This document shows, in pieces, positions 14,295-56,500 of a stretch of 64,000 nucleotides of DNA (positions within the stretch are counted from its first letter, which is position 1; the number at the start of each line of letters is the position of its first letter). The stretch lies in the IMG/VR virus record IMGVR_UViG_3300030294_000005, positions 1 through 64,000 of that record; one strand, given 5' to 3'. Below the pieces are notes generated by a model that was given only the letters and a program-made list of their open reading frames with translations, searched no databases and was not told the DNA's origin. Position numbers and translations under genes: made by a program.

Positions 14295-15236
14295 ATGGGA
14301 ATATATTCTAGTAAAGTAATTTTAGAAGTAAAGAAAACTGTTAAAGGAAAAACTGAAGATTTAGATAAAGATCCAGAAGATGAGCATAAAGACGATACTA
14401 CCCCTGCAACAGATTATAATATAGATGATACTGGTACTTCTAAAGATGATGATGAACCTGAAAAAGATCCAGACACTTCCGATGAAGATAATAAAGATAA
14501 TACCGATACTGATACCAATGATGATACAAATGACGAACATAAGAGTGATAGTACTTCTGCAACCGACTATAATGCAGATAGTGATACTAATAATGATAAT
14601 ACTGAAGATAATAATGATAATACTTCAGAAGATAATGATTATGATATACCTAATGATACAGACGAAAAAACAGATGATACTTCAGATAATGCTGAAGGTG
14701 ATAATGATCAATCAACAGATGCTAATGATTCTTCTACTGATTATTCAGTAGGTAATTCTGGAGAAGATAGTCAATCAGCAACTACATCTGGAGACGGTAC
14801 TGAACAAGACACAGATACTGCTGGACAAGAAGATCCAGGCGATGGGTCTGAAGATAATTTACAGGGAGGTGAAGGTGACACATCAGATTTACAAGGTTTA
14901 GAAACATCATTATTTAAAGATTTATCACAAGAGCAAATTAATATTAAAACTATGGAATTAAAAAATCAGTATTTAGAAATTTATAATGCTATTATAAATA
15001 TTATAAATAGATTAAATAGGGTTGCTAAGACCAGTGATAATATTAAGATTCTAGAATTTGTAATAAAGAAATTATTAGAGCTTAAAGATATATTATATTT
15101 CTATATGGTAAATACATTTGATACTAAAACCTATATAGAGAACTCGATAAACTATGAAGAATATTTAGCAACGTTAAATACTATGAACAAAATACTAGCT
15201 GAATTAAAATCACAGGATGGTAAGGAAAAGTCATAA
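14295..15236 (+). CDS. Acidic low-complexity head/scaffold-like protein
   Basis: Long D/E/T/N-rich region with repeated (T/N)DY motifs; helical C-terminal domain; directly upstream of the capsid gene; starts MGIY. Confidence 0.55.
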   Translation: MGIYSSKVILEVKKTVKGKTEDLDKDPEDEHKDDTTPATDYNIDDTGTSKDDDEPEKDPDTSDEDNKDNTDTDTNDDTNDEHKSDSTSATDYNADSDTNNDNTEDNNDNTSEDNDYDIPNDTDEKTDDTSDNAEGDNDQSTDANDSSTDYSVGNSGEDSQSATTSGDGTEQDTDTAGQEDPGDGSEDNLQGGEGDTSDLQGLETSLFKDLSQEQINIKTMELKNQYLEIYNAIINIINRLNRVAKTSDNIKILEFVIKKLLELKDILYFYMVNTFDTKTYIENSINYEEYLATLNTMNKILAELKSQDGKEKS

Positions 15237-15286
15237 TAATTGCCATTTTGGTATATTATAGAATAAACTTACAGTTGTTTATTTAT

Positions 15287-15298
15287 AACAATATAATA
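15287..15298 (+). promoter_or_regulatory. Late promoter AACA-N6-TA (capsid)
   Basis: AACA-ATATAA-TA. Confidence 0.6.
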
Positions 15299-15360
15299 AA
15301 TTGATAATACAATATTAATACAAATATTAACCAAATTTAAATTGGAAAGGAGATAATATT

Positions 15361-17046
15361 ATGCCAATAGTAGGAACCAGAAAAGTTTCAGACCTAGGTA
15401 GAGGATATGTAAATGATCCTATCAATACCTATGCTGCTTCTTTTAGAGATTTAGCCAAAGATATTTTAAATGAATCAGGTACTGATTTATTTACAGAGCC
15501 TTCAAAAGCTTTGCTATTACAAGGATCAAATGAAACAATGAGGAACTTCTTCGTTGAGAATTCTGCAGATCCAAAGAGTATGACTACATCAGAATATGAA
15601 GATCATATTCAAATGATGAATGAACAGTATTTAAATGATAGAGAGGCAATATTAGAGTATTCACCAGTTGGAGGATTTAACCCAGTAATAGGTATGTCTT
15701 TCCCAATTCATAAAAATATTCTAATGAACAATATCTTCGATAAAGGAGCTATTCAAAAAGTAGTAGCATCTTCACCTAAATTTACCATTTCAATGGAGAC
15801 AAGATTACTTATCACTCCAGATGGTAGAGAAATAGATATGTTTAAAAACCAGGATCAAATGACAGCAGCTATGGATGCAACAGTACCAGTTAAGGAAATT
15901 ACAGTTCCACTTCCAGAATTAGGTACTACTGATATGCTTGCTGCAATTGGAGCCGCTTCTACAGACAATTTATCTATAGAAACAAGAGTATCTTATGTAA
16001 AGATAGTTGATTCATATGAAATTGGAGACACTCTTCCTGATAAAACTGTTGCTACAGCAGCAACAACACTTGATAGATGGATTCCAACAAATCATCTTAA
16101 ATTTGCACCAAATTATGGTGGATTAGAAAGAGTTTTTGTTGAATCAGTTTCATATACAGATGTAAAAGGAATTGTTCAAGAAGATGTAATTTCTGGAGTT
16201 ATGAATAAGAATAAGATTCAAATATCCTCATTAAAAGGTCTTGTTAAAGCTGTAAAGATTTCAGCTAGAAAAGATGCTTCTAGTGCTATGCTTCAAACTT
16301 GTAGCGTATCATGGAAAGTTAAGACTGACATAGTTGAGATACCTAGTGCTATTCCAATAAATACACCAATATCTCCTGATGAAGTTAAAGATATCGGTGC
16401 TTTGTATCAGGTAAATCAATTATCAAAAATTATGAGTTTATTTAAAACAGTTCTTGAGAACTATAAAGATGATAAAATCAGACAGAGCTTGGATACTTCA
16501 TTTGAAACAATGGACCCAACTCAAAGGATTCAATCAAACTTTGACTTTGCTCCAAGATCTGGATACGCTTTGGACCATGTTGAATGGAGACATAAGACAT
16601 TCTTCGATTATCTTGATACTCATGTAACTAAGTTACTTCAGGTATTGAATGATCCTAATATGACAGTAACTGTATTTGGTAGACCTGATCTTATCAGAAA
16701 GATTACCCCAACTGAATATACTTACCAATCCCCAAGTGCTATCGGACCTGTTGAACTTGACTTTGTAAAGACAGTTACAACTTCCGATAAGAGAGTATAT
16801 CAATTTATTTCATCTCAGAAAATGAAGGGTTCAGATAATCTTATTATAGTTCTAAATCCAAGAAACACTGATAGAATTATCTATAGGATTTATGATTACC
16901 AGATGTATGTAAGTAATGAAATAAGAAATGCTCAAAACTATGCTCTTCCTGCAATCCATGCTTTTGAAAGATGGAAGTTTGTAGAATATCAGCCAGTACA
17001 GGGTCGTATGAATATACTAAACCCTACTGGATTAATAGAAGTATAA
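15361..17046 (+). CDS. Major capsid protein
   Basis: 561 aa; head-operon context; N-terminal LNE|S and FVE|N sites; P-domain-like C-terminus (YRIYDYQMYVSNE...PAIHAFER); followed by a strong terminator. Confidence 0.7.
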   Translation: MPIVGTRKVSDLGRGYVNDPINTYAASFRDLAKDILNESGTDLFTEPSKALLLQGSNETMRNFFVENSADPKSMTTSEYEDHIQMMNEQYLNDREAILEYSPVGGFNPVIGMSFPIHKNILMNNIFDKGAIQKVVASSPKFTISMETRLLITPDGREIDMFKNQDQMTAAMDATVPVKEITVPLPELGTTDMLAAIGAASTDNLSIETRVSYVKIVDSYEIGDTLPDKTVATAATTLDRWIPTNHLKFAPNYGGLERVFVESVSYTDVKGIVQEDVISGVMNKNKIQISSLKGLVKAVKISARKDASSAMLQTCSVSWKVKTDIVEIPSAIPINTPISPDEVKDIGALYQVNQLSKIMSLFKTVLENYKDDKIRQSLDTSFETMDPTQRIQSNFDFAPRSGYALDHVEWRHKTFFDYLDTHVTKLLQVLNDPNMTVTVFGRPDLIRKITPTEYTYQSPSAIGPVELDFVKTVTTSDKRVYQFISSQKMKGSDNLIIVLNPRNTDRIIYRIYDYQMYVSNEIRNAQNYALPAIHAFERWKFVEYQPVQGRMNILNPTGLIEV

Positions 17047-17057
17047 TTTTAATAACT

Positions 17058-17111: not shown

Positions 17112-18266
17112 GTGAACACTATAGATTATGATTTCGGTTCTACATTAGAAGAAGTTATGTTTGCTATAAAAACAAATCCAGTATCTTCTGAATTAAAAAA
17201 GCTTAAGTATGAATTAAATAAGTTTTTTAAAGATTCTGAATGTAGAGAGATAATATACACAGAAAATGTTGATAAGTTGTTTTTTGGTATGTGTGTTATT
17301 CCTATGGTAACAGGTGATGATGCAATGAAAATACTAACTTCTAATGATAAGATAAGAATACAATCATATTATCTAGAATTGGACTCTAAATTATTTTCAA
17401 TTGGATTTACTTCTAGGGAGTTAGTTGCTATATTATTACATGAGATAGGTCATGTGGTAAATACATCAGAACCAGTTGAAGATGTAAGAAGATCTATTGA
17501 TATATATCTGGATAAAAATGATACAACAATTAAATTATCAGATGCTGCTCAATATAAAGATATATTAGCATTTGCAGTAAAAGATAGTATTAGAAAGTTT
17601 ACATCATTATTTTTAATGAATGATGATGAAATAATAGCAGATGAGTTCGCAGTAAGATGTGGATATGCTGCAGATTTAGAATCAGCATATGATAGAGTTC
17701 TTAAAAATATTGGAAGAGTTAATAGAGATGTAGATAATAAACTTATGGCTCTACAATGGACATTAAGATTATATACTGATGTAAAGTTTAAAAGAATTGG
17801 ATCTATTCATGTATTACAGAGGGCGAAGAAGATTACTGCCTCCGAATTAATGAATAGAGAAATGAGTATTGTAATTAGAGCATTAAATCAAATTGATGAT
17901 GATACTTTAATACAAGAATCATTAGATATATTGAAGCGTTCAAGCGACATCTATAAGAATTTCAAATATAAAGGCATGAGATCTTTAGAAGATGATTTAT
18001 ATGAGATTCAAATAAGAGTAAAAAATGTAGATGTTGAAGATGAAGCTTTATCTGTATTAAGAGAGATAAATTCACGATTAGCTATCATAGATGATTATGT
18101 AACATCTGAAAAATTGGATGAAGCTGATATGAATAGATGGTGGCAGTTAAAGAATAAGTATTTATTATTAAGAGATGAGTTATCTAAGAAGACAACTTAT
18201 GACTCAAAATATTATGGTTTATTTGTTCAAACCCCTACTGTTAAAAGTAGATCGGCTATGATGTAA
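17112..18266 (+). CDS. Virion protein with a zincin-like HExxH motif
   Basis: LLHEIGH plus downstream EIIADEFA; IQE|S site. Confidence 0.55.
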   Translation: MNTIDYDFGSTLEEVMFAIKTNPVSSELKKLKYELNKFFKDSECREIIYTENVDKLFFGMCVIPMVTGDDAMKILTSNDKIRIQSYYLELDSKLFSIGFTSRELVAILLHEIGHVVNTSEPVEDVRRSIDIYLDKNDTTIKLSDAAQYKDILAFAVKDSIRKFTSLFLMNDDEIIADEFAVRCGYAADLESAYDRVLKNIGRVNRDVDNKLMALQWTLRLYTDVKFKRIGSIHVLQRAKKITASELMNREMSIVIRALNQIDDDTLIQESLDILKRSSDIYKNFKYKGMRSLEDDLYEIQIRVKNVDVEDEALSVLREINSRLAIIDDYVTSEKLDEADMNRWWQLKNKYLLLRDELSKKTTYDSKYYGLFVQTPTVKSRSAMM

Positions 18267-20970: not shown

Positions 20971-22674
20971 ATGATAATATCAAACGTAGTAGCAAAAACA
21001 AAACTAAGACAAGTCCAATCTGAAACTTTAAGATTGATAAAAGAATATTTAATTACATCTTTTGGGCCAATGGCTTCTAATTCTATAATTGTTAAAGCTA
21101 CAGGTAATGCAGATGTAGTAACCCACTATTCTAAAGATGGACATACTATACTAAAAAGTATATTATTTAATGGTATAGTTGAACGAGCTGTTAGAGGAGA
21201 TTTAGAAGATTTGACTAGATATATAGTTAAAGAAGTTGGAGATGGAACAACATCTGCTATTGTATTATCATCATTAATATTTGATGAATTAATAAAAATG
21301 GAAACATCTGATTCACCATATGAAATTGTAAGAAATTTTAAAGAATGTACTGAACAAATTAAAAAAAATATTAAAAAAGAAGCACAAGTATTCGATATTG
21401 AAGCAGCATATAAAATAGCATTAATATCTACAAATGGAAATGAAACAGTTGCTGCTAATATTAAAAATATATATAAAGAATATGGTAATGATGTATTTAT
21501 TGATGTATCAACTTCTACCACAGATAAGACATATTTAAAATCATATGATGGTATGACATTAGAAAATGGATATAGTGATACAGCATTCATAAACAATTCT
21601 AAAAAAGGTGTAGCATCATTAAGAAATCCAAGAATATATGCATTTGAAGATCCTATTGATACTCCAGAAATGATAGCATTATTTAATTCTATTATAGAGC
21701 AGAATATTGTGACTCCATATGGTTCTACAGATGTAGAAGGTGCAGGGCCAATTCCTACAGTTATATTAGCACCTATGATATCTAAAGATTTAACTTCTTA
21801 TATGGATCAATTAGTTCAATTTATGTATAGATTTAAAGATGAAAATACAAGACCACCATTTTTATTAATATCAAACATCTATCAAAAAGAGCAATTTGTT
21901 GATGTTTGTAGATTATGCGGATGTAAAATGATAAAGAAATATATAAATCCAGATCAACAAGCTATTGATGTTGAAAAAGGATTAGCTCCTACATTAGATA
22001 CTATTGTTGATTTTTATGGACAAGCTGATGTTGTTGAGTCTGATGTTGTTAAAACTAAATTTATAAATCCAATGTTAATGCATGATAAGAGTAGTGGAGA
22101 ATTATCTCAAACATTTACTACATTGGTAAGTTTTTTAGAAAGTGAATTAAAGAAATCTCATGAAGAAGGACAAGATAATAAAGTAATAGGAACTTTGAAA
22201 AGAAGAATACATTCTTTAAAAGCTAATATGGTAGAATATCTTGTTGGTGGAGTTTCTACAACAGATAGAGATAGTGTTAGAGATTTAGTTGAAGATGCAG
22301 TATTAAATTGCAGATCAGCTGCTAAAAATGGTGTTGGTAGAGGTGCAAATTTTGAAGGATTAATTGCAACACAATATCTAAAAGATCAATATTATGATGA
22401 TAAAATATATGATTTAATATTTAATTCTTATGAAGAATTAGTTCGTATTTTATATAGAACTAAATATAGTGAAAAAGATACTGAAGTTAAATTAGCAACT
22501 GGTCTTAGAAATGGAATACCAATAAATTTAAGAACAGACATGTTTGAAAAAGATGTATTATGCTCAATAGATACAGATATAGTTATACTGGAAACCATAT
22601 CTAAAATAATAACTTTAATGTTTACATCTAATCAGTTTATTTGCCCAAGTCCAGCAGATAACCAATATCTATAA
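20971..22674 (+). CDS. groEL: Phage GroEL-like chaperonin
   Basis: KDGHTIL, VGDGTTSA (ATP-binding), SYDGMTL and EDAVLNCRSAAKNGV motifs. Confidence 0.85.
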   Translation: MIISNVVAKTKLRQVQSETLRLIKEYLITSFGPMASNSIIVKATGNADVVTHYSKDGHTILKSILFNGIVERAVRGDLEDLTRYIVKEVGDGTTSAIVLSSLIFDELIKMETSDSPYEIVRNFKECTEQIKKNIKKEAQVFDIEAAYKIALISTNGNETVAANIKNIYKEYGNDVFIDVSTSTTDKTYLKSYDGMTLENGYSDTAFINNSKKGVASLRNPRIYAFEDPIDTPEMIALFNSIIEQNIVTPYGSTDVEGAGPIPTVILAPMISKDLTSYMDQLVQFMYRFKDENTRPPFLLISNIYQKEQFVDVCRLCGCKMIKKYINPDQQAIDVEKGLAPTLDTIVDFYGQADVVESDVVKTKFINPMLMHDKSSGELSQTFTTLVSFLESELKKSHEEGQDNKVIGTLKRRIHSLKANMVEYLVGGVSTTDRDSVRDLVEDAVLNCRSAAKNGVGRGANFEGLIATQYLKDQYYDDKIYDLIFNSYEELVRILYRTKYSEKDTEVKLATGLRNGIPINLRTDMFEKDVLCSIDTDIVILETISKIITLMFTSNQFICPSPADNQYL

Positions 22675-39770: not shown

Positions 39771-39795
39771 ATATAATAATTAGGAGTTGATTAAT

Positions 39796-41280
39796 ATGGG
39801 AATTTACAATCCTACAAATAATATAATTCATTTAAATGAACTAGCTATATTATTAGAAACGACTGGTGTAGAAAGAAAATGGAAATGTCCTTATTGTGAT
39901 TATCATGATACAAGAGAAAGATTAGTAAGTCATGTTGATGATGAACATGAAGATATGTTATCAGAAGATTATCCTGCATCAAGAGCTGTATTTAATTATA
40001 TAAATAAAAAGGATCATGGTTCTTGTATTGTATGTAAAAAAGAAACTAAATGGAATGATGAGACTTGGAGATATGAAAGATTATGCGAAATGCCAAAATG
40101 TGAGAAAGAATATATAGCTGGAATGAGAGCTAATATGGTTGGTGTATTTGGTAAAGAGAATTTATTAAATGATCCAGAACAACAAAAAAAGATGTTATCT
40201 AATAGAAAAATCTCAGGAACATATAAATTTGAAGATGGTGGTATTAGATCATACTGTGGTTCTTATGAAAAGAAATTATTAGAGTTTTATGATAAAGTTG
40301 TACGTGCTCATTCTAAAGATGTAATCACTCCTGGTCCTGTAATACAATATCAATATCAAGGAAAAACATTGAATTGGATTACTGATGTATACTATGTGCC
40401 AGCAAATCTGGTCCATGATGTAAAAGATGGTGGAGATAATCCTAACAATAGGCAAATGGATGACTATAGAGCTAAGCAAGATGCAAAAGAAGACGATATT
40501 TCTAAATTAAACAAATATAACTATATAAGATTAACTAATAATAATTTTGATCAATTACTATTGATACTTGCTGAAATAAAATATCAAATGATTGATCCGA
40601 ATAAAGAAAATAATACTGATTATATTATAAGAATAAATGAATCTGAATTAGGAGGGGCTATGCCAAATCAAAATAACCAATCAGACAATGCTTATATCAT
40701 ACCATATCTAATGGATAATTCTTTTAATATTGCTTTATCTACTGATAAGTATTTCTCTAATATGTATAAGATAAAAGATAATAAAATAGAAAAAGGATCT
40801 ATCAAAGATTTATATGAGAGTAAATATAATGTATACAAATATACTGGAGATAATTTTAAAGAAGTATATAAAAGTATATTAGAAGATTATAATAATAAAA
40901 CAAATATAGATAATAGATTCTATCTATATGAAAAAGTATGTGGGAAAAACTTATTAAGTATGGATCAATTAATATTTGATGAAAACTTAGAAGACTGTGC
41001 TGACGCATTTATTGAATCAGTATTAGATACTCAGATAAATGAAGCTACACTTATTCATCTTGCTAATAAAGAAACCCATAGTTTATTATACACAGAGTTA
41101 ACTGATATGCTAGATATAAATAGTAAGAAAAGGATATTATTCAATAATGAAAATACAAATATATTACAAGACATGAATGGATACTTTATATATAATGAAC
41201 AAAGTGATAGAAGAACAAAATCTTATGATAGTATATCATCAATACCTTATATAAATATTATGATTAATAGACTAGCTTAA
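39796..41280 (+). CDS. Virion protein with C2H2/C4 zinc fingers and a PD-(D/E)xK-like nuclease domain
   Basis: CPYC..H....H, CIVC...C and TDVYYVPANLVHDVKDG; starts MGIY at ATG 39796 (AGGAG RBS). Confidence 0.55.
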   Translation: MGIYNPTNNIIHLNELAILLETTGVERKWKCPYCDYHDTRERLVSHVDDEHEDMLSEDYPASRAVFNYINKKDHGSCIVCKKETKWNDETWRYERLCEMPKCEKEYIAGMRANMVGVFGKENLLNDPEQQKKMLSNRKISGTYKFEDGGIRSYCGSYEKKLLEFYDKVVRAHSKDVITPGPVIQYQYQGKTLNWITDVYYVPANLVHDVKDGGDNPNNRQMDDYRAKQDAKEDDISKLNKYNYIRLTNNNFDQLLLILAEIKYQMIDPNKENNTDYIIRINESELGGAMPNQNNQSDNAYIIPYLMDNSFNIALSTDKYFSNMYKIKDNKIEKGSIKDLYESKYNVYKYTGDNFKEVYKSILEDYNNKTNIDNRFYLYEKVCGKNLLSMDQLIFDENLEDCADAFIESVLDTQINEATLIHLANKETHSLLYTELTDMLDINSKKRILFNNENTNILQDMNGYFIYNEQSDRRTKSYDSISSIPYINIMINRLA

Positions 41281-41775: not shown

Positions 41776-41780
41776 TTAAT

Positions 41781-42226: not shown

Positions 42227-42250
42227 AATTTATAAGGAGATGTTTTAATT

Positions 42251-42901: not shown

Positions 42902-43007
42902 ATTAATTAATAGACTGGCTTAACTGTTAGTCTATTTTTTTTGTTAAATTTAATAATAATTATAATATAAACAATTATATAAATAAAGATTATAGGAGGA
43001 ATATGAT

Positions 43008-43622: not shown

Positions 43623-43664
43623 TATTAACAACTATATAAAATAAAATTTATTGGGGGAATTAAT

Positions 43665-44039
43665 ATGAATGAAAAAATCAAAGCTCAAATCTGTTTTGCA
43701 GGAACTGCAAATCTAGAAAAGGTAAAAGAACAACTAGTACAATTAAAGAATGAAAATAAATATGAATTTCATTGTTGCTTTTTACCAAGGCATATAGTAG
43801 TTGAAAAAGGATTTACAACAGATATAATTGATATGCTTGAAAATACATTAGGTGATGATCTTATATGGGAACTAAAAGAATATAAATCATTTGATGATAT
43901 TATGAAAGATTTATATACTGTAAGAGAGCACGTTGCTAATACAGTAAATAGAATGTTTGTTTTAGATTCAGGTACTGCTAGAGGTGTTGCTAAAGAAATT
44001 GAGCTATTCACTTCTGCAAAAGTTATAATGATGCCTTAA
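43665..44039 (+). CDS. Small Rossmann-like protein (possible SLOG/nucleoside-deoxyribosyltransferase fold)
   Basis: ICFAGT N-terminal strand-loop; RMFVLDSGTARGVAKEIELF resembles the SLOG/NDT G-T..E motif. Confidence 0.4.
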   Translation: MNEKIKAQICFAGTANLEKVKEQLVQLKNENKYEFHCCFLPRHIVVEKGFTTDIIDMLENTLGDDLIWELKEYKSFDDIMKDLYTVREHVANTVNRMFVLDSGTARGVAKEIELFTSAKVIMMP

Positions 44040-44046
44040 GAAAGTT

Positions 44047-44142
44047 AAACTAGAGATTGATTTCTCTAGTTTATTTTTTGCCAAATTTAATAATAACCAT
44101 ATATTATACATATGAATAAATTTATAAGGAGATGTTTTAATT
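44047..44142 (+). repeat. Terminator-early promoter-RBS cassette
   Basis: AAACTAGAGA-ttgatt-TCTCTAGTTT; AACCATATATTATACATATGAATAA; TTTATAAGGAGATGTTTTAATT. Confidence 0.7.
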
Positions 44143-44292
44143 ATGAATATATATGATAATATACTTAGTGAAGGATTAATAAGATCAAGACGAGATAATA
44201 AATGGGGGTTTAGTAATAAAGAAGGAGAAGAAGTAATACCCTGTATGTGCCACGATCCTATATTATATTTAAATAAGGAGACATCTAAATGA
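44143..44292 (+). pseudogene. Truncated single WG repeat (49 aa)
   Basis: MNIYDNILSEGL...KWGFSNKEGEEVIPC, then loses the pattern; stop overlaps the next ATG. Confidence 0.6.
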
Positions 44293-44822
44293 AAGAATAT
44301 GATATTAAAAATGGATTAATAATAGTAATGCTAAATGATAAATGGGGATTAATGAATAAAGATAATGAAGAAATTATACCATGTATATATGATCATATAT
44401 TTAAATTCGAAGAAGGGATAGCTCCAGTTTCATTAAATGGTAAGATGGGGTTTATTAATACAAAAGGCGAAGAAATAATTCCATGTAAATATATATATAA
44501 TTCATATAATACTATTTTTCATGATGGGCTTTCCCCAGTAAGAGTAGATAATAAATTTGGATATATTAATAAAAAAGGTGAAGAAATAATACCATTAAAA
44601 TATGATATGGCTTGTTATTTTAGAGAAGGATTAGCATCTGTAAATCTAAATGATAAATGGGGATTTATTAATACAAAAGGTGAAGAAGTAGTACCATTGA
44701 TATATGAAAATGCATTATTTAGTTTTGATAAAAAAATATTATGTGTAAGAACAAAGAGTGGATGGGGTACTATTAATAAGGATGATATATTATTTGATAA
44801 AGAGGATGTTCTAAATGAATGA
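44289..44822 (+). CDS. WG-repeat protein 4
   Basis: WG repeats. Confidence 0.9.
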   Translation: MKEYDIKNGLIIVMLNDKWGLMNKDNEEIIPCIYDHIFKFEEGIAPVSLNGKMGFINTKGEEIIPCKYIYNSYNTIFHDGLSPVRVDNKFGYINKKGEEIIPLKYDMACYFREGLASVNLNDKWGFINTKGEEVVPLIYENALFSFDKKILCVRTKSGWGTINKDDILFDKEDVLNE

Positions 44823-45420
44823 ATTAGGATTTGTATCTACTTATCATGAAGGACTTTTTAGAACGATAAAGGATGGTAAATGGGGTTTTATTGATAAAAC
44901 TGGTAAAATAATAATACCATATAAATATGATTTTGCATATAATTTTATGAATGGAATTGCATTTGTAAAACTAAATGGTAAATGTGGATTTATTAATAAG
45001 AAAGATAAAGAAATTGTATTAATAAAATATGACGATATATCTGATTTTAATGAAAAAATATCTATAGTAAAGCTTAATGATAAGTGGGGATTAATAGATA
45101 ATCGTGGAAGAGAAATAATACCATTAAGATATGATTGGATATCTAGATTAGAAAGGGTATTTAAAATAGGAAAGGTATCTAAATTTGATGATTATATTGC
45201 AACAGTAAGGCTAGACAATAAATATGGATTAATAAATGTAAAAGGGGAGGAGATAACACCTATAAAATATGATGATGTATTTGAATTTGATAAGAATGGA
45301 TTTGCAATAGTAAAAGCAAATGATAAATTTGGAGCTATTAATAAAGAAGGCAAAGAAGTTATACCATGTGAATATGATAAAACATCTAATTTTAATGATA
45401 TGGTTAAAGGGGGATATTAA
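44815..45420 (+). CDS. WG-repeat protein 5
   Basis: WG repeats. Confidence 0.9.
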   Translation: MNELGFVSTYHEGLFRTIKDGKWGFIDKTGKIIIPYKYDFAYNFMNGIAFVKLNGKCGFINKKDKEIVLIKYDDISDFNEKISIVKLNDKWGLIDNRGREIIPLRYDWISRLERVFKIGKVSKFDDYIATVRLDNKYGLINVKGEEITPIKYDDVFEFDKNGFAIVKANDKFGAINKEGKEVIPCEYDKTSNFNDMVKGGY

Positions 45421-46248
45421 ATGAAAAAATATGACTATGTATTTAGTTTTAATGATGGATTAGCAAAAGTAGTATTGAATGATAAATGGGGATTTATTAA
45501 TAAAAAAGAAGAAGAAGTAATACCATTAATATATGATATCGTATCTAAATTTAATAAAAGATTAATAGCTGTAAACATTAATAATAAATGTGGAATTATT
45601 AACAGAAAAGGTAAAATAATAATTCCATTAATATATGATAATATGTCTCAATATATTAATAATGATCATATGATAAAAGTAACACTTAATGGTGGTTGGG
45701 GATTTATCAACACTAATAATAAAGTTGTAGTCCCATTAAAATATGATGATATAAGTGAATTTAGTAAAGGGCTTTGCTCATTTAGACTGGATGAAAAATG
45801 GGGTATTATAAATAGAAGGGGTAAAGAAACAGTTTCATGTAAATATGATGATATAGATGAGTTTGAAAATGGATTAGCAGCTGTAAAACTAAATAATAAA
45901 TGGGGTGTTATTAATAAACGAGATAAAGAAATAATACCAATAAAATATGATGATATATTTAGTTTTGATAAAAAAAGACTTCTAGTAGTATTGAATAATA
46001 AATATGGATTAATTAATAGAAATGATGAAGAAATAGTTTCATGTAAATATGATTATATAGATGATTTTATTGATGGATTATCAATGGTGAAATTAAATGA
46101 TAAATTTGGATTCATTGATAGAAATGGTAAAGAAGTTATACCATTAATATATAATGAAGCACATAATTTTCATAATAAGCATACTATAGTAAAATTAAAT
46201 GATAAGTGGATATATATAAATAAAGCTGGTAAAGAAATACAATTATAA
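45421..46248 (+). CDS. WG-repeat protein 6
   Basis: WG repeats. Confidence 0.9.
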   Translation: MKKYDYVFSFNDGLAKVVLNDKWGFINKKEEEVIPLIYDIVSKFNKRLIAVNINNKCGIINRKGKIIIPLIYDNMSQYINNDHMIKVTLNGGWGFINTNNKVVVPLKYDDISEFSKGLCSFRLDEKWGIINRRGKETVSCKYDDIDEFENGLAAVKLNNKWGVINKRDKEIIPIKYDDIFSFDKKRLLVVLNNKYGLINRNDEEIVSCKYDYIDDFIDGLSMVKLNDKFGFIDRNGKEVIPLIYNEAHNFHNKHTIVKLNDKWIYINKAGKEIQL

Positions 46249-46261
46249 GGGGATGTATTAA

Positions 46262-46771
46262 ATGAAAAAATATGATGATCTAGGTAGTTTTAGTGAAGGT
46301 TTAGCTGAGATTAGATTAGGTAGTAAATGGGGGTTTATTAATAGAGAATTAGTAGAGGTTATACCATGTAAATATAGTTCTGCAGAACTTTTTAGTGAAG
46401 GTTTAGCAGTGGTATCATTAGATGGTAAATTTGGATATATAGATAAGGCTGGTAAAGAAGTTATACAGTGTAAGTATGATTATGCATATGATTTTATTGA
46501 AGGAATGGCATTAGTAAGATTAGATGATAATATAGGATATATTAATAAAGAAGGTAAAGAAGTTATATCGTTAATATATGCTAATGGTTATGAATTTTGT
46601 GGTGGCTTAGCAATAGTAGAATCAGGTTGTAGAATGGGATTTGTTGATAAAAAAGGTGAAGAAGTAATTCCATTAATATTTGATGAAGTATATGATTTCA
46701 AAGAAGATTTAGCAGTTGTAAAATTAAATGGTAAATGTTATTTCATAAATAAAGTTGGTGAAGAAATATAA
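46262..46771 (+). CDS. WG-repeat protein 7
   Basis: 169 aa; tandem duplicate of the next gene (534-bp period). Confidence 0.9.
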   Translation: MKKYDDLGSFSEGLAEIRLGSKWGFINRELVEVIPCKYSSAELFSEGLAVVSLDGKFGYIDKAGKEVIQCKYDYAYDFIEGMALVRLDDNIGYINKEGKEVISLIYANGYEFCGGLAIVESGCRMGFVDKKGEEVIPLIFDEVYDFKEDLAVVKLNGKCYFINKVGEEI

Positions 46772-46795
46772 TATAAAAAAGGTGGTATATATTAA

Positions 46796-47305
46796 ATGAA
46801 AAAATATGATGATCTTAATAGATTTTATGAAGGATTAGCAGAAATTAGATTGGGTGATAAATATGGATTTATTAATAAAGAATTGATAGAAGTTGTTCCA
46901 TGTAAATATGATTTCATATCTAGTTTTAGTGAGGGATTAGCAATAGTTGGATTAGATAAGAAATATGGCTTTATTAATAAAGATGGTGAAGAAGTTATAC
47001 CATTAAAATATGATTATGTGTGTGATTTTAATGAAGAACTTGCTTTAGTAAAATTGAATGATAAGATGGGATATATTAATAAAGAAGGTAAAGAAGTTAT
47101 ACCATTGATATATGATGATGTATATGATTTTCATAAAGGATTAGCCATAGTAGTATTGGATAATAAATGGGGATTTATTGATAAAGAAGGTAAAGTAATC
47201 ATATCCTTAATATATGATGAAGCATATGATTTTCATAAAGGTTTAGCAGTTGTAAGATTAAATAGTAAATGTTATTTTATAAACAAAGCTGGTAAAGAAA
47301 TATAA
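46796..47305 (+). CDS. WG-repeat protein 8
   Basis: 169 aa; same start MKKYDDL, same end EI* and same downstream spacer as protein 7. Confidence 0.9.
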   Translation: MKKYDDLNRFYEGLAEIRLGDKYGFINKELIEVVPCKYDFISSFSEGLAIVGLDKKYGFINKDGEEVIPLKYDYVCDFNEELALVKLNDKMGYINKEGKEVIPLIYDDVYDFHKGLAIVVLDNKWGFIDKEGKVIISLIYDEAYDFHKGLAVVRLNSKCYFINKAGKEI

Positions 47306-49295: not shown

Positions 49296-49790
49296 ATGGG
49301 TATATACAATGTAAATAAAATTATAACTGAATCTTATGACACTAATGCTGATATAAATAAAATTATAACAAGTTTATCTAGTAAGGAAAGAGACAATCTC
49401 CTTAAGCGTCCTGGATCTATAGAACAATCATATACAACTGTATATGAAAAAATAGAAAAGGTAGATAGGGTTGTTGCAGGTTATATTAGATTAAATAAAC
49501 CAGAGGAAGGTCCAATATATTGCTTAGAGTTTGCAATACGTTCAGAGTTTAGGCATCGTGGCTTAGCATATAACATGCTAAAAGAAGCATTAGAAAGCAA
49601 TTCTAAACAACGTTTTATAATATCTCATCCAGATAATGATAATATAGGTTCTCAGAAAGTAGTAGAGAAGGCTGGATTTAAATTACTAGAAAGACAAAAA
49701 TATGTATCTATTTATCTTTATGATAAAAAGTTTCCAAATCATACAGCAAAGCAAATCTATAGTAGTATAGAAGGTGAGACTAAAGACTGA
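49296..49790 (+). CDS. GNAT acetyltransferase, probably virion-packaged
   Basis: EFRHRGLA (motif A), NIGSQKVVEKAGF (motif B); starts MGIY...IITE|S. Confidence 0.8.
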   Translation: MGIYNVNKIITESYDTNADINKIITSLSSKERDNLLKRPGSIEQSYTTVYEKIEKVDRVVAGYIRLNKPEEGPIYCLEFAIRSEFRHRGLAYNMLKEALESNSKQRFIISHPDNDNIGSQKVVEKAGFKLLERQKYVSIYLYDKKFPNHTAKQIYSSIEGETKD

Positions 49791-50566: not shown

Positions 50567-51613
50567 ATGAAAAATATATATTATGATTACCAGACTAATA
50601 ACAAAACTTTTTTAGATATGTATTCGCATCTAAAAAAATTAGGAATAACTAACAATAATTTCTTTCTTATTATTCTTAATAAAGATTTAGTAGGAGTAGA
50701 TCCTTTTAATGAAAATCTTTCTACTTCACAAAAAATTGAAATTATAGAAGAATGTAGGTTAAACTATTGGTATTTCTTAAGAGAAGTTATAAGATTTAAT
50801 TATTCGTCTTCTATTGATATTAAGCCATATATTTTAAATAGTGCAAATTTAGCATTTAATTTCTGTGTAGATATGAATATGAATATATTTTATGAATCTC
50901 CTTCTGTAGAAACTGGTAAAACAACATCAGTAATAGCACGTTTATTATGGGAATATATGTTTGCGTTAAATAGCAAATGTACTATGAGTAATAGTACGTT
51001 TAACAATGTAAAATTAAGTTTGGAATATATTAAAAAATATAAATCAATGCTTCCAATATATATACGTGATTCAGATAATATAGATATAGCTACAAGTAGA
51101 TTTGTTATAAATAAATTAAATGCAAATTGTATTAAAGTAATACCTGTTGCTAGTAGCGAAACTTCTGCAAGTAATTTAGGTAGAGGTGTATTTGGAAGAG
51201 TATTCTTAGATGAGTTTGCATTTACTCCATTTAATAAATTATTATATAAAGCAATGTGTCCATATATAGCAGAATTTAGATTGCGTGATACTAATAATAG
51301 ACATAATTATACTCCTAGTGGTATTATAATTGCTACAATGCCAGCCGATATAGCTGATGATACTGCATTATTTGCATATCAATTAGAACAAGAAGCTGTT
51401 AAATTTGATGAGTCTTGGTATGATATTAGTTATGAAAATTTACAACAATTGATTGAAAAAAACACATTAGAAATATCATTCGTACTTATAAGATTTAATT
51501 ATAAAGATTTAGGTTTAGATAAGGAATGGTTCGAATCTAGATGTAAAGATTTCAATAATGATTATAAATCTATACAAAGAGAGACTCTTCTAAACTGGGA
51601 TAATTGTAACTAA
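50567..51613 (+). CDS. Terminase large subunit paralogue, ATPase part only
   Basis: YYDYQT.N.TFL, NYWYFLREV, ETGKT (Walker A), VFLDEFAF (Walker B); ends at 348 aa with no nuclease domain. Confidence 0.65.
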   Translation: MKNIYYDYQTNNKTFLDMYSHLKKLGITNNNFFLIILNKDLVGVDPFNENLSTSQKIEIIEECRLNYWYFLREVIRFNYSSSIDIKPYILNSANLAFNFCVDMNMNIFYESPSVETGKTTSVIARLLWEYMFALNSKCTMSNSTFNNVKLSLEYIKKYKSMLPIYIRDSDNIDIATSRFVINKLNANCIKVIPVASSETSASNLGRGVFGRVFLDEFAFTPFNKLLYKAMCPYIAEFRLRDTNNRHNYTPSGIIIATMPADIADDTALFAYQLEQEAVKFDESWYDISYENLQQLIEKNTLEISFVLIRFNYKDLGLDKEWFESRCKDFNNDYKSIQRETLLNWDNCN

Positions 51614-53419: not shown

Positions 53420-53482
53420 ATGTATTTATATTAAAACTAGAGATTCTATTCTCTAGTTTTATTTTTTGTTGAATATTAGGTA

Positions 53483-53494
53483 AACATAAGGATA
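53483..53494 (+). promoter_or_regulatory. Late promoter AACA-N6-TA
   Basis: AACA-TAAGGA-TA. Confidence 0.6.
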
Positions 53495-53509
53495 ATATTA
53501 TATAAGGAG

Positions 53510-56500
53510 ATGATTTATATGGGAGTTTATGATGCAACTAAATTTCATGAAATAAAAACGAATGAAAGAGAAATAGAAAAGTATAAAGTTCAATATCCTA
53601 AATTATCACATGTAAGATGTGATAAAGAAAATGAAGGAATAATACTAGATAATAATGGAGCATTTGTAGCAATTATTCAATGGGATAACAAGTCTAAATA
53701 TATAGTAGCTTTAGAAGTTGCTCCAGAGTATCGTAAAAATGGAATTGGTAAATACTTATTAAAAAAAGCCTATTCTAAAGGTATAAATAAATTATCAGTA
53801 AATAAGAGTAATACATCTGCTATAAAGTTATATATTAAGAGTGGATATAAAGAAGAAAAAACCGATAAGACTATGATATATATGATTAAAGAATCCACTA
53901 TAAATGAAAACTATTTTTTTAGTGGCGATGATATAGTATTAAATATAGAAAAATGGAAAGCAGATTCACCGAATAATATACTATATGTAACTGGATTAAG
54001 TGGTAGTGGAAAGACTACACTAGCAGCAGAATATGAAAAAAAGTATAATGCTGAAATGTTTGAAATAGATGGTTTGGAATATAGTTATGACGCATCTAAA
54101 AGTAAATTATTACAAAAAGCAAAAGATAAATATCCAGAATATGCTGAAGCATTAAAAAATGACTGGAAAGATTTAAAAGGAAATCCAGGAGTAGATTTAT
54201 TAATAAGAGTTTTATTATATGTAATTAAAGAAATGAAGGATTCTGGAAAATTATATATATTAGATGGGGTACAAATATTTCAATGGTTAGATCCTGATAC
54301 TTTAAAAAGTCAACCATTAATTATTAAAGGAACATCTATGACTAAAAGTATATATCAAAGATTTAAAAGAAATGGTGGAGATAAAATAGATTGGATTGCT
54401 GAACTACGTAATAAATTTCCACAATTGTTTAAAAGATATCTAAAAGATGAAAAGGAAGTTAGTACATTTAAAAAATCAATAAAAGAATCATATAATATAG
54501 GAGATCAATTTAGTTGGGAAACTTTTGGTGGAAACAAATATTCTGGAATAATCTCAGAAATAGATAGCAATGTTTTAATTGTTAAATTAAAAGATGGAAC
54601 ACAGAAAGCTGTTGAGATGAGAGAATCTTCTACTGCTGATACAGATGATATTAATGATTGGGAAAAGAATACTAATTCAGAATTGATTGGTGATGATTCA
54701 AACAATCTATCAGAGTTAGAGAAGGAAAAGAATAATTATGATATGCTTATTTATAAACAAAAAAGAGTAGCAGATTGGAAGAGTGAAGAATTATTTGGTA
54801 AAGATAATACTGAAAGATATGATGAATTAAAAGATAAATATTTAAAAACTATTGATAATTTTGATGATGTATATAATACTCCACAAATAAATACCGAAGC
54901 ATCTATATCATCAGCAGATGGATTTGAAATAGACGATTCTAAAGATAATGAATATACTAAATTAAGCGATGATCCAAATAATGAAGTTCCAGGATATGAT
55001 TCAGCTACTTTAAAACAAGCTATAATGTGGTGCAATAATACAATGGTAAGTATGATATTACCAGTTGGATCTTTAAAAGAATTAGAAGATTCTTATGTTA
55101 AATGGAGATCAATGACTAGAAAGCATCAAAGAGATAGTGATAATAAAAGTATAGAATTATTTGGAATGAATAATTTAGAACATTTTGATTATTTAAAATC
55201 AAAATTTATTGGTACTCAAAGTAGTGGAGATAAATCATATGATACTACATCAGTACTAGATGTGTCTGGTAAAGCAATAGAAATAGATCAGATACGAGAT
55301 GATTTAACTGCAAATGGCAATACGAATGGAAATGCAAATGGAGACATGCATGAATCATCTATGTTGGATTATGGTATATCATTATTAAGAATAAATAATA
55401 TTATAACAGAAGATATCTGTTCTAATATAGTAAAAGAAAATGCTATAAAAGATATAAAAAATAAACTTAATAACGCATATGATAAATCATATGATTCACT
55501 TCCAACACAATTACCATACTTTTCATTTAATGAAATACAATCTAGAATAGACACCTCTAACCCATACAAATATGCTGGTCTTAGTAAAGATATAAGTTTA
55601 AAAACATGGTTAGAGAGTTATTCCTTGATATGTAGTGGGATACTCGATTCTAGAATGAAAGAGTATACTCCATTATGGATAACTAAACTAGATAGTCTAT
55701 ATAGAGATTTATATAAAGCAACGGATGATACAAAGATACATCAATTAAAAGAAAATATATTATTATTAGGATGGAATCCAGAAGTTAATTTTACTTATGA
55801 AAATAGAATTAAGGCTACTGATAGATGCATGTCTATCATATCAGAGTATTATAAAGATAATTCTATAAATTTATCTCCATTAATTAATAATATAAATTTA
55901 AATAATAATGTAATAACTGAGCAAAATAAAAAAGATGAATTATATCCAATATATATATTATTATCATATACTAGTACTATTGCAGGAAAGGTAATATCAA
56001 GAGTTACAGATAGTATATATTCTCATGCTTGTTTAAGTCTTGATTCATCACTTCAAAAACTATATAGTTTTAATGCAAACGTGCATGGGTTCTCACTAGA
56101 ATCTATAACTGAGTATCTGAAGTATAATAAGAATAGTATAATACAACTCAGTTGTGTATTTGTTAAAGCTCCAGACTTATCTATTATAGAATCTGGATTA
56201 AATGATTTATTATTGAATATAAGAAATACATCATATAGCTTTTTAAATATACTTGGAATAATGTTAGACAAATCTATACAGCTAAATAATTCTATGATAT
56301 GTTCTCAATTTGTAGATTATATGTTTAAATCAATAAATGTAGATATAACTAATAAACCAAGTGGATTAGTAATGCCTAAAGATTTTCAAGTGTTAAAGAA
56401 TAATAAAGTATATAAATTATATGAAGGAAAGATAGCTGACTATAATAGTCAGAAGATTAATTCAATGATGAATGTACTAATAAAGAAAGCTATATATATA

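What the first reader, a model, noticed from the sequence alone, without database searches (positions are those of the whole stretch)
14295..53560. Shared N-terminal MG[IV]Y...(I/L)xE peptide: candidate capsid-targeting sequence for ejected cargo
Seen: four otherwise unrelated proteins begin MGIYSSKVILE (14295), MGIYNPTNNIIHLNE (39796), MGIYNVNKIITE|S (49296) and MGVYDATKFHEIKTNE (53519). Each has a proper RBS at that Met. Known: T4 internal proteins use a 10-aa capsid-targeting peptide (IPIII MKTYQEFIAE, aromatic at position 4, ending I-x-E) removed by gp21. Inference: an analogous packaging tag loading enzymes (two GNATs, a kinase, an amidase, a nuclease) into this jumbo head for delivery at infection; also usable for protein-delivery engineering.
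Basis: partly seen in the sequence, partly recalled or inferred. Interest (0 to 1): 0.78.

Follow-up and report, generated by a model that had tools for sequence, protein, structure and literature searches.

The report
Shared cleavable head-targeting peptide, jumbo phage
Several unrelated proteins of an uncultured jumbo phage begin with the same short peptide as the phage's scaffold-like head protein, and that peptide ends in a head-protease cutting site, so it is probably a removable tag for loading enzymes into the capsid, as in phage T4.

Summary
Four well-initiated genes in the window start MG[IV]Y (0.04 expected, P about 1e-7). A fifth lies at 69.6 kb of the same contig, and none occurs among replication or nucleotide-metabolism genes across 170 kb.

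The peptide is disordered, lies outside the folded domains, and ends in hydrophobic-x-Glu. The window encodes a T4 gp21 / phiKZ gp175-type prohead protease. The capsid protein keeps an invariant hydrophobic-x-Glu at the position where the nearest cultured relative, phiR1-37, is cut (LQE|S, mature N-terminus Ser87).

The key new result concerns gene 14295. It is not an enzyme cargo but the acidic, scaffold-like protein next to the capsid gene. Its family has 895 clusters, and 101 of the 138 full-length members examined start M-(G/A/S)-hydrophobic-(F/Y) or M-hydrophobic-(F/Y). Of the same 138, 130 have a hydrophobic-x-Glu by residue 30.

In relatives, GNAT, P-loop kinase and DUF6582 modules are fused between this peptide and the acidic protein, with the same cut sites at the joints.

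Best reading: a T4-CTS-like propeptide copied from the scaffold-like protein onto enzyme cargo. Encapsidation, cleavage and ejection are all inferred. No member of the clade is cultured, and many cargo homologues lack the tag.

The parts
14295..14327 (+). Tag of the acidic protein: MGIYSSKVILE, predicted cut after Glu11 (I-L-E|V)
14295..15236 (+). 313-aa acidic (27% D+E) scaffold-like head-core protein directly upstream of the capsid gene. It consists of the tag, a disordered acidic run and a conserved C-terminal four-helix bundle.
39796..39840 (+). Tag of the nuclease protein: MGIYNPTNNIIHLNE (L-N-E|L). Residues 1-23 are disordered in the AF2 model and the fold starts at about residue 28.
39796..41280 (+). 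494-aa Zn-finger endonuclease (phrog_15137; homologues AR9 g233 and phiR1-37 g237) plus a C-terminal domain with a weak PRK-like hit
49296..49331 (+). Tag of the small GNAT: MGIYNVNKIITE (I-T-E|S)
49296..49790 (+). 164-aa GNAT acetyltransferase
53519..53566 (+). Tag of the polyvalent protein: MGVYDATKFHE|IKTNE|
53519..57097 (+). 1192-aa polyvalent protein: GNAT, P-loop NTPase/kinase, unassigned regions and a permuted papain-like (C92-like) region at about residues 800-960. It has 8 hydrophobic-x-Glu-Ser sites against 2.0 expected.
53870..53908 (+). Internal tag-like joint TMIYMIKE|STINE|N between the GNAT and P-loop modules. It aligns with the N-terminal tag of P0259 and of stand-alone P-loop homologues.
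2960..3781 (-). Prohead maturation protease (Peptidase_S77 44.9 bits, gathering cut-off 27; Peptidase_S80 29.4 bits, cut-off 23.4). It carries its own candidate sites: FIINE|T at residue 13 and VSE|S, VLE|S, LYE|S after the catalytic domain.
15361..17046 (+). Major capsid protein. Predicted maturation cut is REAILE99|YSPVGG (codon 15655-15657), homologous to phiR1-37 LQE|Ser87. A second conserved site is DILNE38|SG (15472-15474).
11590..14232 (+). 880-aa conserved head-region protein upstream of the acidic gene. The called gene 12025-14232 (735 aa) within this ORF has 7 hydrophobic-x-Glu-Ser sites against 1.8 expected. In L012 the gene after its homologue carries the tag and is fused to the acidic protein.

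Best explanation
M-G-(I/V/L/F)-(Y/F)-x(2-16)-(L/I/F/V)-x-E is the N-terminal propeptide of prohead-core proteins in an uncultured clade of jumbo phages distantly related to phiR1-37 and AR9.

Its home is the acidic, scaffold-like protein encoded next to the capsid gene. In the window phage the same peptide has been placed on at least four other proteins: a Zn-finger nuclease, a GNAT, a GNAT/P-loop/papain-like polyvalent protein, and one member of an internal-protein-like paralogue array.

The inferred mechanism has three steps:
1. The N-terminal small-hydrophobic-aromatic part docks the protein into the assembling prohead core, alongside or in the same way as the scaffold-like protein.
2. After shell assembly, the gp21/gp175-type serine protease (2960-3781) cuts after the Glu of the hydrophobic-x-Glu motif. 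This removes the tag, cuts the polyvalent protein at its module joints, and matures the capsid protein at ILE99.
3. The freed enzymes stay in the head and are presumably ejected with the DNA.

What is shown:
- the motif, its enrichment and its portability;
- the presence of the protease gene;
- conservation of the cut motif at the capsid site homologous to a mapped cut;
- natural fusions of cargo modules to the acidic protein.

What is inferred: docking, cleavage, retention and ejection.
For: 1. Enrichment. Four MG[IV]Y starts occur where 0.04 are expected. Five occur among 215 genes over 170 kb, and none on replication or metabolic genes.

2. Peptide-level selection with no DNA cassette.

3. 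Protease. Peptidase_S77 and S80 score above their gathering thresholds, a PHROG head maturation protease matches, and the only PDB hit is T4 gp21, 5JBL.

4. Cut motif. GenBank annotates the phiR1-37 capsid protein g135 as 'mature N-terminus at Ser87', i.e. ..MLQE|S. At the aligned site the Glu is invariant and P3 is I/V/L/M/F in the window and 18 distinct relatives.

5. Tag ends. Of 37 distinct MG-tagged proteins longer than 100 aa, 35 have [LIVF]-x-E at residues 6-20, with P3 L/I/F, P2 mostly N and P1' S/N/L. The comparison is 30/33 tagged against 277/741 others (Fisher 5e-10).

6. Scaffold-like family. There are 895 clusters. Of 138 full-length members, 60 start MG-hydrophobic-(Y/F/W), 24 start M[AS]x[YFW] and 17 start M-hydrophobic-[YFW]. 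130 of 138 have the cut motif by residue 30, usually followed by x-(I/V)-(N/D)-G-(Q/K).

7. Portability. Seventeen of 120 nuclease homologues carry the tag, always at the extreme N-terminus, whichever domain follows: P-loop, SKI, SET+GNAT, DUF6582 or Zn finger.

8. Rosetta-stone fusions.
   - P0259 = tag + P-loop domain (36% identical, E 8e-25, to window 53519 residues 120-327) + ITE|VDKVVNGE + acidic protein.
   - P0213 = tag + GNAT + a second MGIY tag + acidic protein.
   - L012/L023 = tag + transglutaminase-like + GNAT + DUF6582 + DUF362 + internal tags + acidic protein.

9. The tag is disordered and lies outside the fold (pLDDT 33-38 for residues 1-20).

10. Hydrophobic-x-Glu-Ser sites are most over-represented in the polyvalent protein, the 880-aa head-region protein, the protease itself and the nuclease.

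11. The fifth tagged gene sits in an array flanked by PHROG 'virion structural proteins'.

12. phiR1-37 g237 (nuclease homologue) and g134 (acidic protein upstream of the capsid gene, MSALFLSTLLQE|DED) are annotated as virion structural proteins.

13. T4 precedent. A 10-aa CTS has targeting residues 4 and 7 and processing residues 8 and 10, and the gp21 motif is L/I-x-E (PMC9026906).
Against: - No virion proteome or cultured member exists for this clade. The closest cultured capsid protein is only 22% identical.
- The hydrophobic-x-Glu element is low-information here, with a 39% background.
- Most nuclease homologues have no N-terminal extension, including virion-associated phiR1-37 g237 and the nucleases of 8 relatives whose acidic protein does or does not carry the tag. 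The tag is therefore not required for the nuclease family in general.
- The acidic family shows no detectable sequence relation to phiR1-37 g134 (BLAST E 8; hhalign probability 1.3%).
- One GroEL homologue in a relative (L014) also starts MGIYSNIVKKDKLRE.
- The excess of hydrophobic-x-Glu-Ser sites does not survive correction for 89 tests (best P = 0.001).
- Whether the tag targets, or merely gets cut, cannot be separated by sequence analysis.
Confidence: 0.6

Rival explanations
1. Processing-only propeptide. The peptide is simply a leader cut off by the prohead protease, for example to hold enzymes inactive or as a remnant of fusion to the scaffold-like gene. Incorporation into the head would then be determined elsewhere in each protein or by other partners.
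For: - Many nuclease and P-loop homologues carry only very short leaders ending in the cut motif (MYIINE|A, MYVNE|S, MEILLE|A) without the MG-aromatic part.
- phiR1-37 g237 is virion-associated with no leader at all.
- Internal copies at module joints look like cleavage joints.
Against: - A cut site alone does not explain why residues 2-4 (G, I/V/L/F, Y/F) are conserved at the extreme N-terminus across unrelated proteins and across 895 clusters of the acidic family.
- In T4 the equivalent N-terminal positions, residues 4 and 7, carry the targeting function (PMC9026906).
- To be cut by a prohead-confined protease, a protein must already be inside the prohead.
Confidence: 0.22
2. A signal unrelated to the capsid. 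Candidates are recruitment to the phage-encoded GroEL-like chaperonin, an N-terminal modification site (Gly exposed after Met removal, possibly a substrate of the co-occurring GNATs), membrane association, or a stability determinant.
For: - The phage encodes its own GroEL (20971-22674).
- The T4 gp23 N-terminus is reported to direct proteins to GroEL (cited in PMC10052503).
- GNATs recur among tagged or fused proteins.
- A GroEL homologue in L014 itself starts MGIY.
Against: - The tag's home is the acidic protein adjacent to the capsid gene.
- The tag is always followed by the protease motif also found at the capsid maturation site.
- Cargo modules are physically fused to the head-core protein in relatives.
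- The N-myristoylation consensus is not met (residue 6 is P, N, V or A in the window tags), and bacteria lack the enzyme (established knowledge).
Confidence: 0.08
3. Chance, mis-called starts or shared ancestry of gene 5' ends (a duplicated promoter-RBS-start cassette, or a disguised GIY-YIG nuclease motif).
For: - The motif is short.
- The genome is AT-rich with a skewed amino-acid composition.
- Two of the genes (39796, 53519) share a 20-nt upstream element.
Against: - P is about 1e-7.
- RBS spacing supports the starts.
- Independent gene calls in hundreds of metagenomic homologues give the same N-termini.
- Synonymous codon differences and background-level upstream identity argue against a cassette.
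- There is no GIY-YIG Pfam hit and no YIG element downstream.
Confidence: 0.02

Closest known systems
Bacteriophage T4 capsid targeting sequence (CTS) of IPI/IPII/IPIII and Alt, removed by gp21 (Mullaney & Black 1996; reviewed in PMC9026906, PMC7411985)
   Same: - A short N-terminal peptide is shared by otherwise unrelated head-internal proteins.
- An aromatic residue sits at position 4.
- The peptide ends in (L/I)-x-E.
- The genome encodes a gp21-family (S77) protease.
- The cargo includes host-directed enzymes.
   Different: - There is no sequence relationship to MKTYQEFIAE. This consensus starts M-G-hydrophobic-(Y/F) and varies in length (P1 Glu at residues 6-20).
- The same peptide heads the scaffold-like acidic protein.
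- It recurs internally at module joints of polyproteins.
- The phage is a jumbo phage with a split multisubunit RNA polymerase, not T4-like.
- Function is untested.
phiKZ / SPN3US / 201phi2-1 head maturation (gp175 / gp245 protease, Peptidase_S80; propeptides on capsid, portal and ejection proteins; PMC10052503, PMC7411985)
   Same: - A jumbo phage with a gp21-like protease cutting after Glu.
- N-terminal propeptides on many head proteins.
- Two SPN3US proteins have short (20-24 aa) propeptides.
- A targeting role for propeptides has been proposed there but is unproven.
- The protease has C-terminal self-cleavage sites.
   Different: - P3 is A/S/G in phiKZ and SPN3US, but L/I/F/V/M here (T4-like).
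- Most phiKZ-type propeptides are 100-250 aa long with no shared consensus.
- Here a defined 7-20 aa consensus is shared between proteins.
Yersinia phage phiR1-37 g134 / g135 / g237 (nearest cultured relative; GenBank AJ972879.2)
   Same: - The capsid protein is cut after L-Q-E (mature N-terminus Ser87) at a site that aligns with the window's ILE99.
- An acidic protein upstream of the capsid gene has a 12-aa leader, MSALFLSTLLQE|DED.
- The nuclease homologue g237 is annotated as a virion structural protein.
   Different: - The capsid protein is only 22% identical.
- g134 has no detectable sequence similarity to the window's acidic family.
- g237 has no N-terminal tag.
- No MG-hydrophobic-(Y/F) consensus is present in the g134 or g237 N-termini.
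Polyvalent proteins of phages and conjugative elements (Iyer et al. 2017, PMC5512222)
   Same: - Multi-domain proteins combine GNAT, kinase-like, peptidase, nuclease, NUDIX and SNF2 modules in shifting combinations.
- They are predicted to be delivered with the DNA and processed by proteases.
   Different: - That paper's defining contexts (MuF/portal linkage, zincin-like processing peptidases) were not examined or found here.
- The N-terminal tag, the gp21-type cut sites at the joints and the fusions to a scaffold-like protein were not found in that paper by keyword search.

Membership tests
T4-type capsid targeting sequence system | A short N-terminal peptide shared by otherwise unrelated proteins of one phage | tested here: met
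   Five proteins in 170 kb share it, with P about 1e-7 and no other similarity between them.
T4-type capsid targeting sequence system | The peptide ends in the prohead-protease motif (L/I)-x-E | tested here: met
   35 of 37 tagged proteins have it, with P3 L/I/F/V. The motif alone is low-information, with a 39% background.
T4-type capsid targeting sequence system | The genome encodes a gp21-family (Peptidase_S77) prohead protease | tested here: met
   Gene 2960-3781(-) scores 44.9 bits against a cut-off of 27. Its only PDB hit is T4 gp21, 5JBL.
T4-type capsid targeting sequence system | The same motif is used at the capsid-protein maturation site | tested here: met
   An invariant Glu with hydrophobic P3 occurs at the site aligned with the mapped phiR1-37 cut LQE|Ser87. 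The cut in this phage is inferred, not observed.
T4-type capsid targeting sequence system | The peptide is necessary and sufficient to load proteins into proheads | not testable with these tools
   This needs fusion and packaging experiments.
T4-type capsid targeting sequence system | Tagged proteins are present in virions in processed form and are ejected | not testable with these tools
   Only indirect evidence exists: phiR1-37 g134 and g237 are annotated as structural, and the fifth tagged gene lies next to PHROG virion structural proteins.
phiKZ/SPN3US-type (Peptidase_S80) propeptide processing | Cleavage motif (S/A/G)-x-E with a small residue at P3 | tested here: not met
   P3 is L/I/F/V in the tags and I/V/L/M/F in the capsid protein. 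The protease does pass the S80 gathering score.
Polyvalent proteins (Iyer et al. 2017) | Multiple unrelated conflict-type enzyme domains in one polypeptide, with shuffled architectures among relatives | tested here: met
   Gene 53519 combines GNAT, P-loop and a C92-like region. Homologues add HAD, NUDIX, SNF2, SET, DUF6582, DUF362, M23 and nuclease domains.
Polyvalent proteins (Iyer et al. 2017) | Linkage to head-morphogenesis (MuF/portal) genes, indicating packaging | tested here: inconclusive
   No MuF or portal linkage was seen. Instead there are repeated fusions to the acidic protein beside the capsid gene.
GIY-YIG nuclease N-terminal motif | GIY followed about 10-11 residues later by YIG, with a Pfam GIY-YIG domain | tested here: not met
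   No GIY-YIG hit in any of the four proteins, and no YIG element.
N-myristoylation signal (MGxxxS/T) | A small or hydroxyl residue at position 6, and a host N-myristoyltransferase | tested here: not met
   Residue 6 is S, P, V or A in the window tags and mostly N across the set. Bacterial hosts lack the enzyme (established knowledge).

The most novel reading that the evidence does not exclude
A large uncultured clade of jumbo phages (at least 895 protein clusters of the marker family) uses 'scaffold N-terminus mimicry' as a modular loading system. Any enzyme that acquires the 7-20 aa M-G-hydrophobic-(F/Y)...hydrophobic-x-E leader of the scaffold-like protein, or is fused behind it, would be co-assembled into the prohead core, released by the gp21-type protease and injected. 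This would make the leader a sequence-defined, transferable capsid-targeting tag outside the T4 family. It would also explain how polyvalent effector proteins are packaged and cut into modules.
Probability: 0.4. Interest if true: 0.75.

Novelty: new variant of a known kind. Interest (0 to 1): 0.62.

Why it matters
How jumbo phages sort dozens of ejection proteins into their heads is an open question. In the literature searched, the T4 CTS was the only short, sequence-defined capsid-targeting peptide described. The SPN3US papers only suggest that propeptides may target proteins.

A short consensus leader shared by a scaffold-like protein and by nuclease, acetyltransferase and kinase-like cargo, with natural fusion intermediates, gives a concrete and testable rule for this clade:
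- it offers a way to predict injected effectors from sequence alone;
- it proposes a mechanism for packaging and processing of polyvalent proteins;
- it provides a candidate tag for loading proteins into phage heads.

The limits are that everything is computational and that no host or isolate is known.

Tried and rejected
- **GIY-YIG reading of 'MGIY'.** There is no Pfam hit and no YIG element.
- **Myristoylation signal.** The consensus is not met.
- **DNA-level cassette or duplicated 5' ends.** Upstream identity is at background level and the shared codons differ synonymously.
- **Shared promoter.** A 20-nt element AAACATAAGRATAATATWAT precedes only two of the genes (39758 and 53482). A 3-mismatch search is not above chance. 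It fits the AR9 late-promoter pattern AACA-N6-TA, but that pattern is too degenerate in 25% GC DNA to count as evidence.
- **Single-protein search for related loci** for the 1192-aa and 494-aa proteins returned only the same phage and one near-identical contig.
- **The 164-aa GNAT** has no homologue in the word-indexed search.
- **Orthology of the acidic protein with phiR1-37 g134.** Neither BLAST nor hhalign gives a signal. No tblastn hit exists in 50,697 phage records.
- **Foldseek.** Searches of the nuclease model and of the acidic C-terminal bundle gave no significant PDB match (E > 0.05). There was only a weak PD-(D/E)XK theme and generic helical bundles.
- **Per-contig co-variation of acidic-protein and nuclease N-termini.** The result is consistent with the hypothesis: the nuclease carries the MG tag only where the acidic protein does (3 genomes, against 0 of 4 distinct genomes lacking it). 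It is underpowered, however, because most nucleases have no leader at all.
- **Site-density scan for hydrophobic-x-Glu-Ser.** The ranking is suggestive but not significant after multiple-test correction.
- **Rfam and tRNA scans** of the window found nothing.


Full report
**Source and context**

The window is positions 1-64000 of IMG/VR contig UViG_3300030294_000005 (236,184 bp, 25% GC). It belongs to an uncultured jumbo phage. The genes identified include:
- a split multisubunit RNA polymerase fragment;
- a GroEL;
- a primase and a helicase;
- a terminase large subunit of which only the N-terminal part is seen, so it may be interrupted;
- HNH endonucleases;
- a major capsid protein at 15361-17046.

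The nearest cultured relatives are Yersinia phage phiR1-37, Listeria phage LPJP1 and the staphylococcal jumbo phages, whose capsid proteins are only about 22% identical. Thirty related metagenomic contigs have capsid proteins 48-65% identical.

**The observation**

The four starts are exactly as described, each with a well-spaced Shine-Dalgarno sequence. With this phage's amino-acid composition, 0.04 MG[IV]Y starts are expected among 89 genes, and four are seen (P about 1e-7).

The proteins share nothing else. Upstream DNA is at background identity and the four shared codons differ synonymously, so the constraint acts on the peptide.

I walked the contig to 170,298 bp. Among 215 called genes there are five MG[IV]Y starts. 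The fifth is MGVYTSTKKLDTFDE|S at 69600-70619(-). It is a paralogue of a neighbouring MSVY protein and sits in an array flanked by PHROG 'virion structural proteins'. None of the identifiable replication or nucleotide-metabolism genes between 85 and 170 kb carries the motif (ThyX, Tmk, RNase H, Dam, DnaB, PIF1, gyrase B, an RNA polymerase subunit).

**What the four proteins are**

- 49296 is a GNAT.
- 53519 is a 1192-aa polyvalent protein. It has a GNAT and a P-loop NTPase/kinase, with a region around residues 800-960 whose His...Cys(SQFV) pattern and ESM-Atlas look-alikes point to a permuted papain-like (C92/NlpC-P60) amidase. Pfam does not detect that region.
- 39796 is a Zn-finger endonuclease homologous to AR9 g233 and phiR1-37 g237, with a further C-terminal domain.
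- 14295 is different in kind. It is a 313-aa, 27% Asp+Glu protein immediately upstream of the capsid gene. It consists of the tag, a long disordered acidic run and a conserved C-terminal four-helix bundle (pLDDT 87). By position, composition and helicity it resembles a scaffolding or core protein, not an enzyme cargo.

**The protease and its motif**

Gene 2960-3781(-) passes the Pfam gathering scores of both Peptidase_S77 (T4 gp21) and Peptidase_S80 (phiKZ gp175). Its only match among solved structures is T4 gp21.

The GenBank record of phiR1-37 states that the capsid protein g135 has its mature N-terminus at Ser87. The cut is therefore ..MLQE|SMIGG, which is L-x-E. In an alignment of the window capsid protein, 18 distinct relatives and phiR1-37, this site corresponds to REAILE99|YSPVGG. 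The Glu is invariant and P3 is always I/V/L/M/F. A second site, DILNE38|SG, is also shared with phiR1-37. The clade's protease thus most likely has T4-like specificity (hydrophobic-x-Glu), not the A/S/G-x-E of phiKZ and SPN3US.

The protease itself has FIINE|T at residue 13 and three hydrophobic-x-Glu-Ser sites just after its catalytic domain. This fits the C-terminal self-processing reported for gp21, gp175 and gp245.

**The tag ends in that motif**

Across 37 distinct MG-hydrophobic-(Y/F) proteins longer than 100 aa collected from the window, related loci and database homologues, 35 have [LIVF]-x-E with the Glu at residues 6-20:
- residue 2 is always Gly, by selection;
- residue 3 is I/L/V/F;
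- residue 4 is F or Y;
- P2 is most often Asn;
- P1' is most often Ser, Asn or Leu.

The motif alone is weak evidence in this AT-rich proteome. It occurs in 39% of untagged N-termini, against 5/5 tagged in this genome (P = 0.0095).

The AF2 model of the nuclease, built from 46 sequences (mean pLDDT 84.5), leaves residues 1-23 disordered and starts the fold at the Zn finger near residue 28. AR9, phiR1-37 and LPJP1 homologues start directly at that Zn finger. The tag is therefore an add-on.

**Portability**

Of the 120 best nuclease homologues, 17 start MG-(I/V/F)-(Y/F). The tag is always at the extreme N-terminus, whichever domain follows: Zn finger, P-loop NTPase, shikimate-kinase-like, SET+GNAT or DUF6582. 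Many other homologues carry only a 5-10 aa leader such as MNDYIIINE|S, MYIINE|A or MEILLE|A. This looks like a minimal version of the same device.

**The tag's home**

A profile of the acidic protein's C-terminal domain finds 895 clusters among 1.84 billion representatives. Of 138 full-length members among the best 150:
- 60 start MG-hydrophobic-(Y/F/W), 24 start M[AS]x[YFW] and 17 start M-hydrophobic-[YFW];
- 130 have a hydrophobic-x-Glu by residue 30, typically ..(L/I/F)-(N/Q)-E|(L/V/A)-x-(I/V)-(N/D)-G-(Q/K).

The peptide is thus the hallmark N-terminus of this head-core family. The enzymes of the window phage carry a copy of it.

**Natural fusions**

- P0259 is tag (MAIYKTNIQPLEE|NF..) + a P-loop domain 36% identical (E 8e-25) to residues 120-327 of window 53519 + ..ITE|VDKVVNGE + acidic run + C-terminal bundle.
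- P0213 is tag + GNAT + a second, internal MGIYSNKATYIQE|LKIDGK + acidic protein.
- L012/L023 encode a 1247-aa protein. It has an MGIFF tag, transglutaminase-like, GNAT, DUF6582 and DUF362 domains, then two internal tag copies and the acidic protein.
- P0227 and P0301 are analogous.

In the alignment with P0259, the internal joint of the window's polyvalent protein (residues 118-130, TMIYMIKE|STINE|NYFF) lines up with P0259's N-terminal tag. The end of the P-loop module (SIKE|S) is also conserved. The module borders therefore carry the cut motif in different architectural contexts.

Hydrophobic-x-Glu-Ser sites are most over-represented in four proteins:
- the polyvalent protein (8 against 2.0 expected);
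- the 880-aa head-region protein (7 against 1.8);
- the protease (3 against 0.38);
- the nuclease (3 against 0.51).

This ranking is suggestive only.

**Limits and counter-evidence**

- Nothing here shows encapsidation, cleavage or ejection.
- The tag is lineage-restricted. In 11 contigs where both loci were recovered, the nuclease carries the MG tag in only two (L017/L056 and L005/L065), plus the window phage itself. In all three the acidic protein also has the tag. One further paired contig has only a short MIINE|S leader, and the other eight start at the Zn finger.
- phiR1-37 g237 is annotated as a virion protein without any leader, so other packaging routes exist.
- The acidic family has no detectable similarity to phiR1-37 g134. 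The parallel with it (position, acidity, 12-aa leader ending LQE|D) is architectural only.
- One GroEL homologue in a relative starts MGIY.
- No paper in the searchable library mentions this motif. The polyvalent-protein and jumbo-phage surveys did not mention it in keyword searches.

**Verdict**

The best explanation is a T4-CTS-like, protease-removable N-terminal propeptide that marks prohead-core proteins. It originates on the scaffold-like acidic protein and has been copied onto, or fused ahead of, enzyme cargo. This is a new variant of a known kind.

Noticed in passing
window 41365-47305: An array of about nine tandem paralogues made of WG_beta_rep repeats (PF14903; 45421-46248 has 8 repeats, E 1e-79). 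Their repeated out-of-frame ATGGGWATATATTAA explains the spurious short 'MGIY*' hits.
   Followed up: partly
window 58219-61226: Five tandem paralogues all start MKIILVKE(K/T)E(D/N)G. The one member scanned (59776-60492) has no Pfam hit; function unknown.
   Followed up: partly
window 17112-18266: The conserved gene directly downstream of the capsid gene has a borderline Peptidase_M48 hit (20.1 bits against a cut-off of 20.3), and the L012 homologue has an HEIGH motif. This could be a Zn-metalloprotease in the head module, in addition to the serine prohead protease.
   Followed up: partly
window 14246-14277: A perfect 13-bp inverted repeat (TTGTACTGATAAA ... TTTATCAGTACAA) lies immediately upstream of the RBS of the acidic-protein gene, with no T-run after it. 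It may be an RNA processing, stability or regulatory hairpin.
   Followed up: no
window 39758-39777 and 53482-53501: A near-identical 20-nt element AAACATAAGRATAATATWAT sits about 20 nt upstream of the RBS of the nuclease and polyvalent genes. Each follows a terminator-like hairpin plus T-run. It fits the AR9 late-promoter pattern AACA-N6-TA.
   Followed up: partly
window 170-955, 31541-32350(-), 62501-63406; 50567-51613; 32559-34106(-): There are three HNH homing-endonuclease genes. The terminase large subunit is represented only by an N-terminal part, and an RNA polymerase beta fragment lies next to an HNH gene, which suggests interrupted genes. No Rfam intron or tRNA was detected in the window.
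   Followed up: partly
window 55900-56400 (residues ~800-960 of the 1192-aa protein): This region has a His...Cys(SQFV) pattern. ESM-Atlas look-alikes (score 0.90) include Peptidase_C92 / NlpC-P60 clusters. PHROGs labels the region 'enoyl-CoA hydratase-like' (phrog_1128), which is probably a misleading family name.
   Followed up: partly
same contig beyond the window: L044-L048 (contig 67-109 kb): Three features:
- an array of four proteins with N-terminal multi-site leaders (67152-71714), of which only the MGVY and MSVY members show detectable mutual similarity, followed at 71818-74251 by two PHROG virion structural proteins;
- a 3582-aa protein with Peptidase_C39_2 and lysozyme domains (84337-95085, minus strand);
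- ThyX and thymidylate kinase genes, suggesting thymine rather than uracil DNA, unlike AR9.
   Followed up: partly
L014:15797-17509: The GroEL homologue of a relative starts MGIYSNIVKKDKLRE, where the window homologue has MIISNVVAKTKLRQ. This is either chance or a tagged chaperonin, and it is a possible counter-example to 'tag = head cargo'.
   Followed up: no
L133 (IMGVR_UViG_3300045988_142688) 276-12604: Four MG-(V/L)-(F/Y) starts occur within 13 kb around the nuclease gene of a more distant 251-kb phage (MGVFFNE.., MGLFVLDE.., MGLYSKENVLLSE.., MGLYVILE..). Two of them are short ORFs (63 and 79 aa) with weak ribosome-binding sites. No Pfam hits in the two that were scanned. This is a second lineage with dense use of the tag.
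   Followed up: partly
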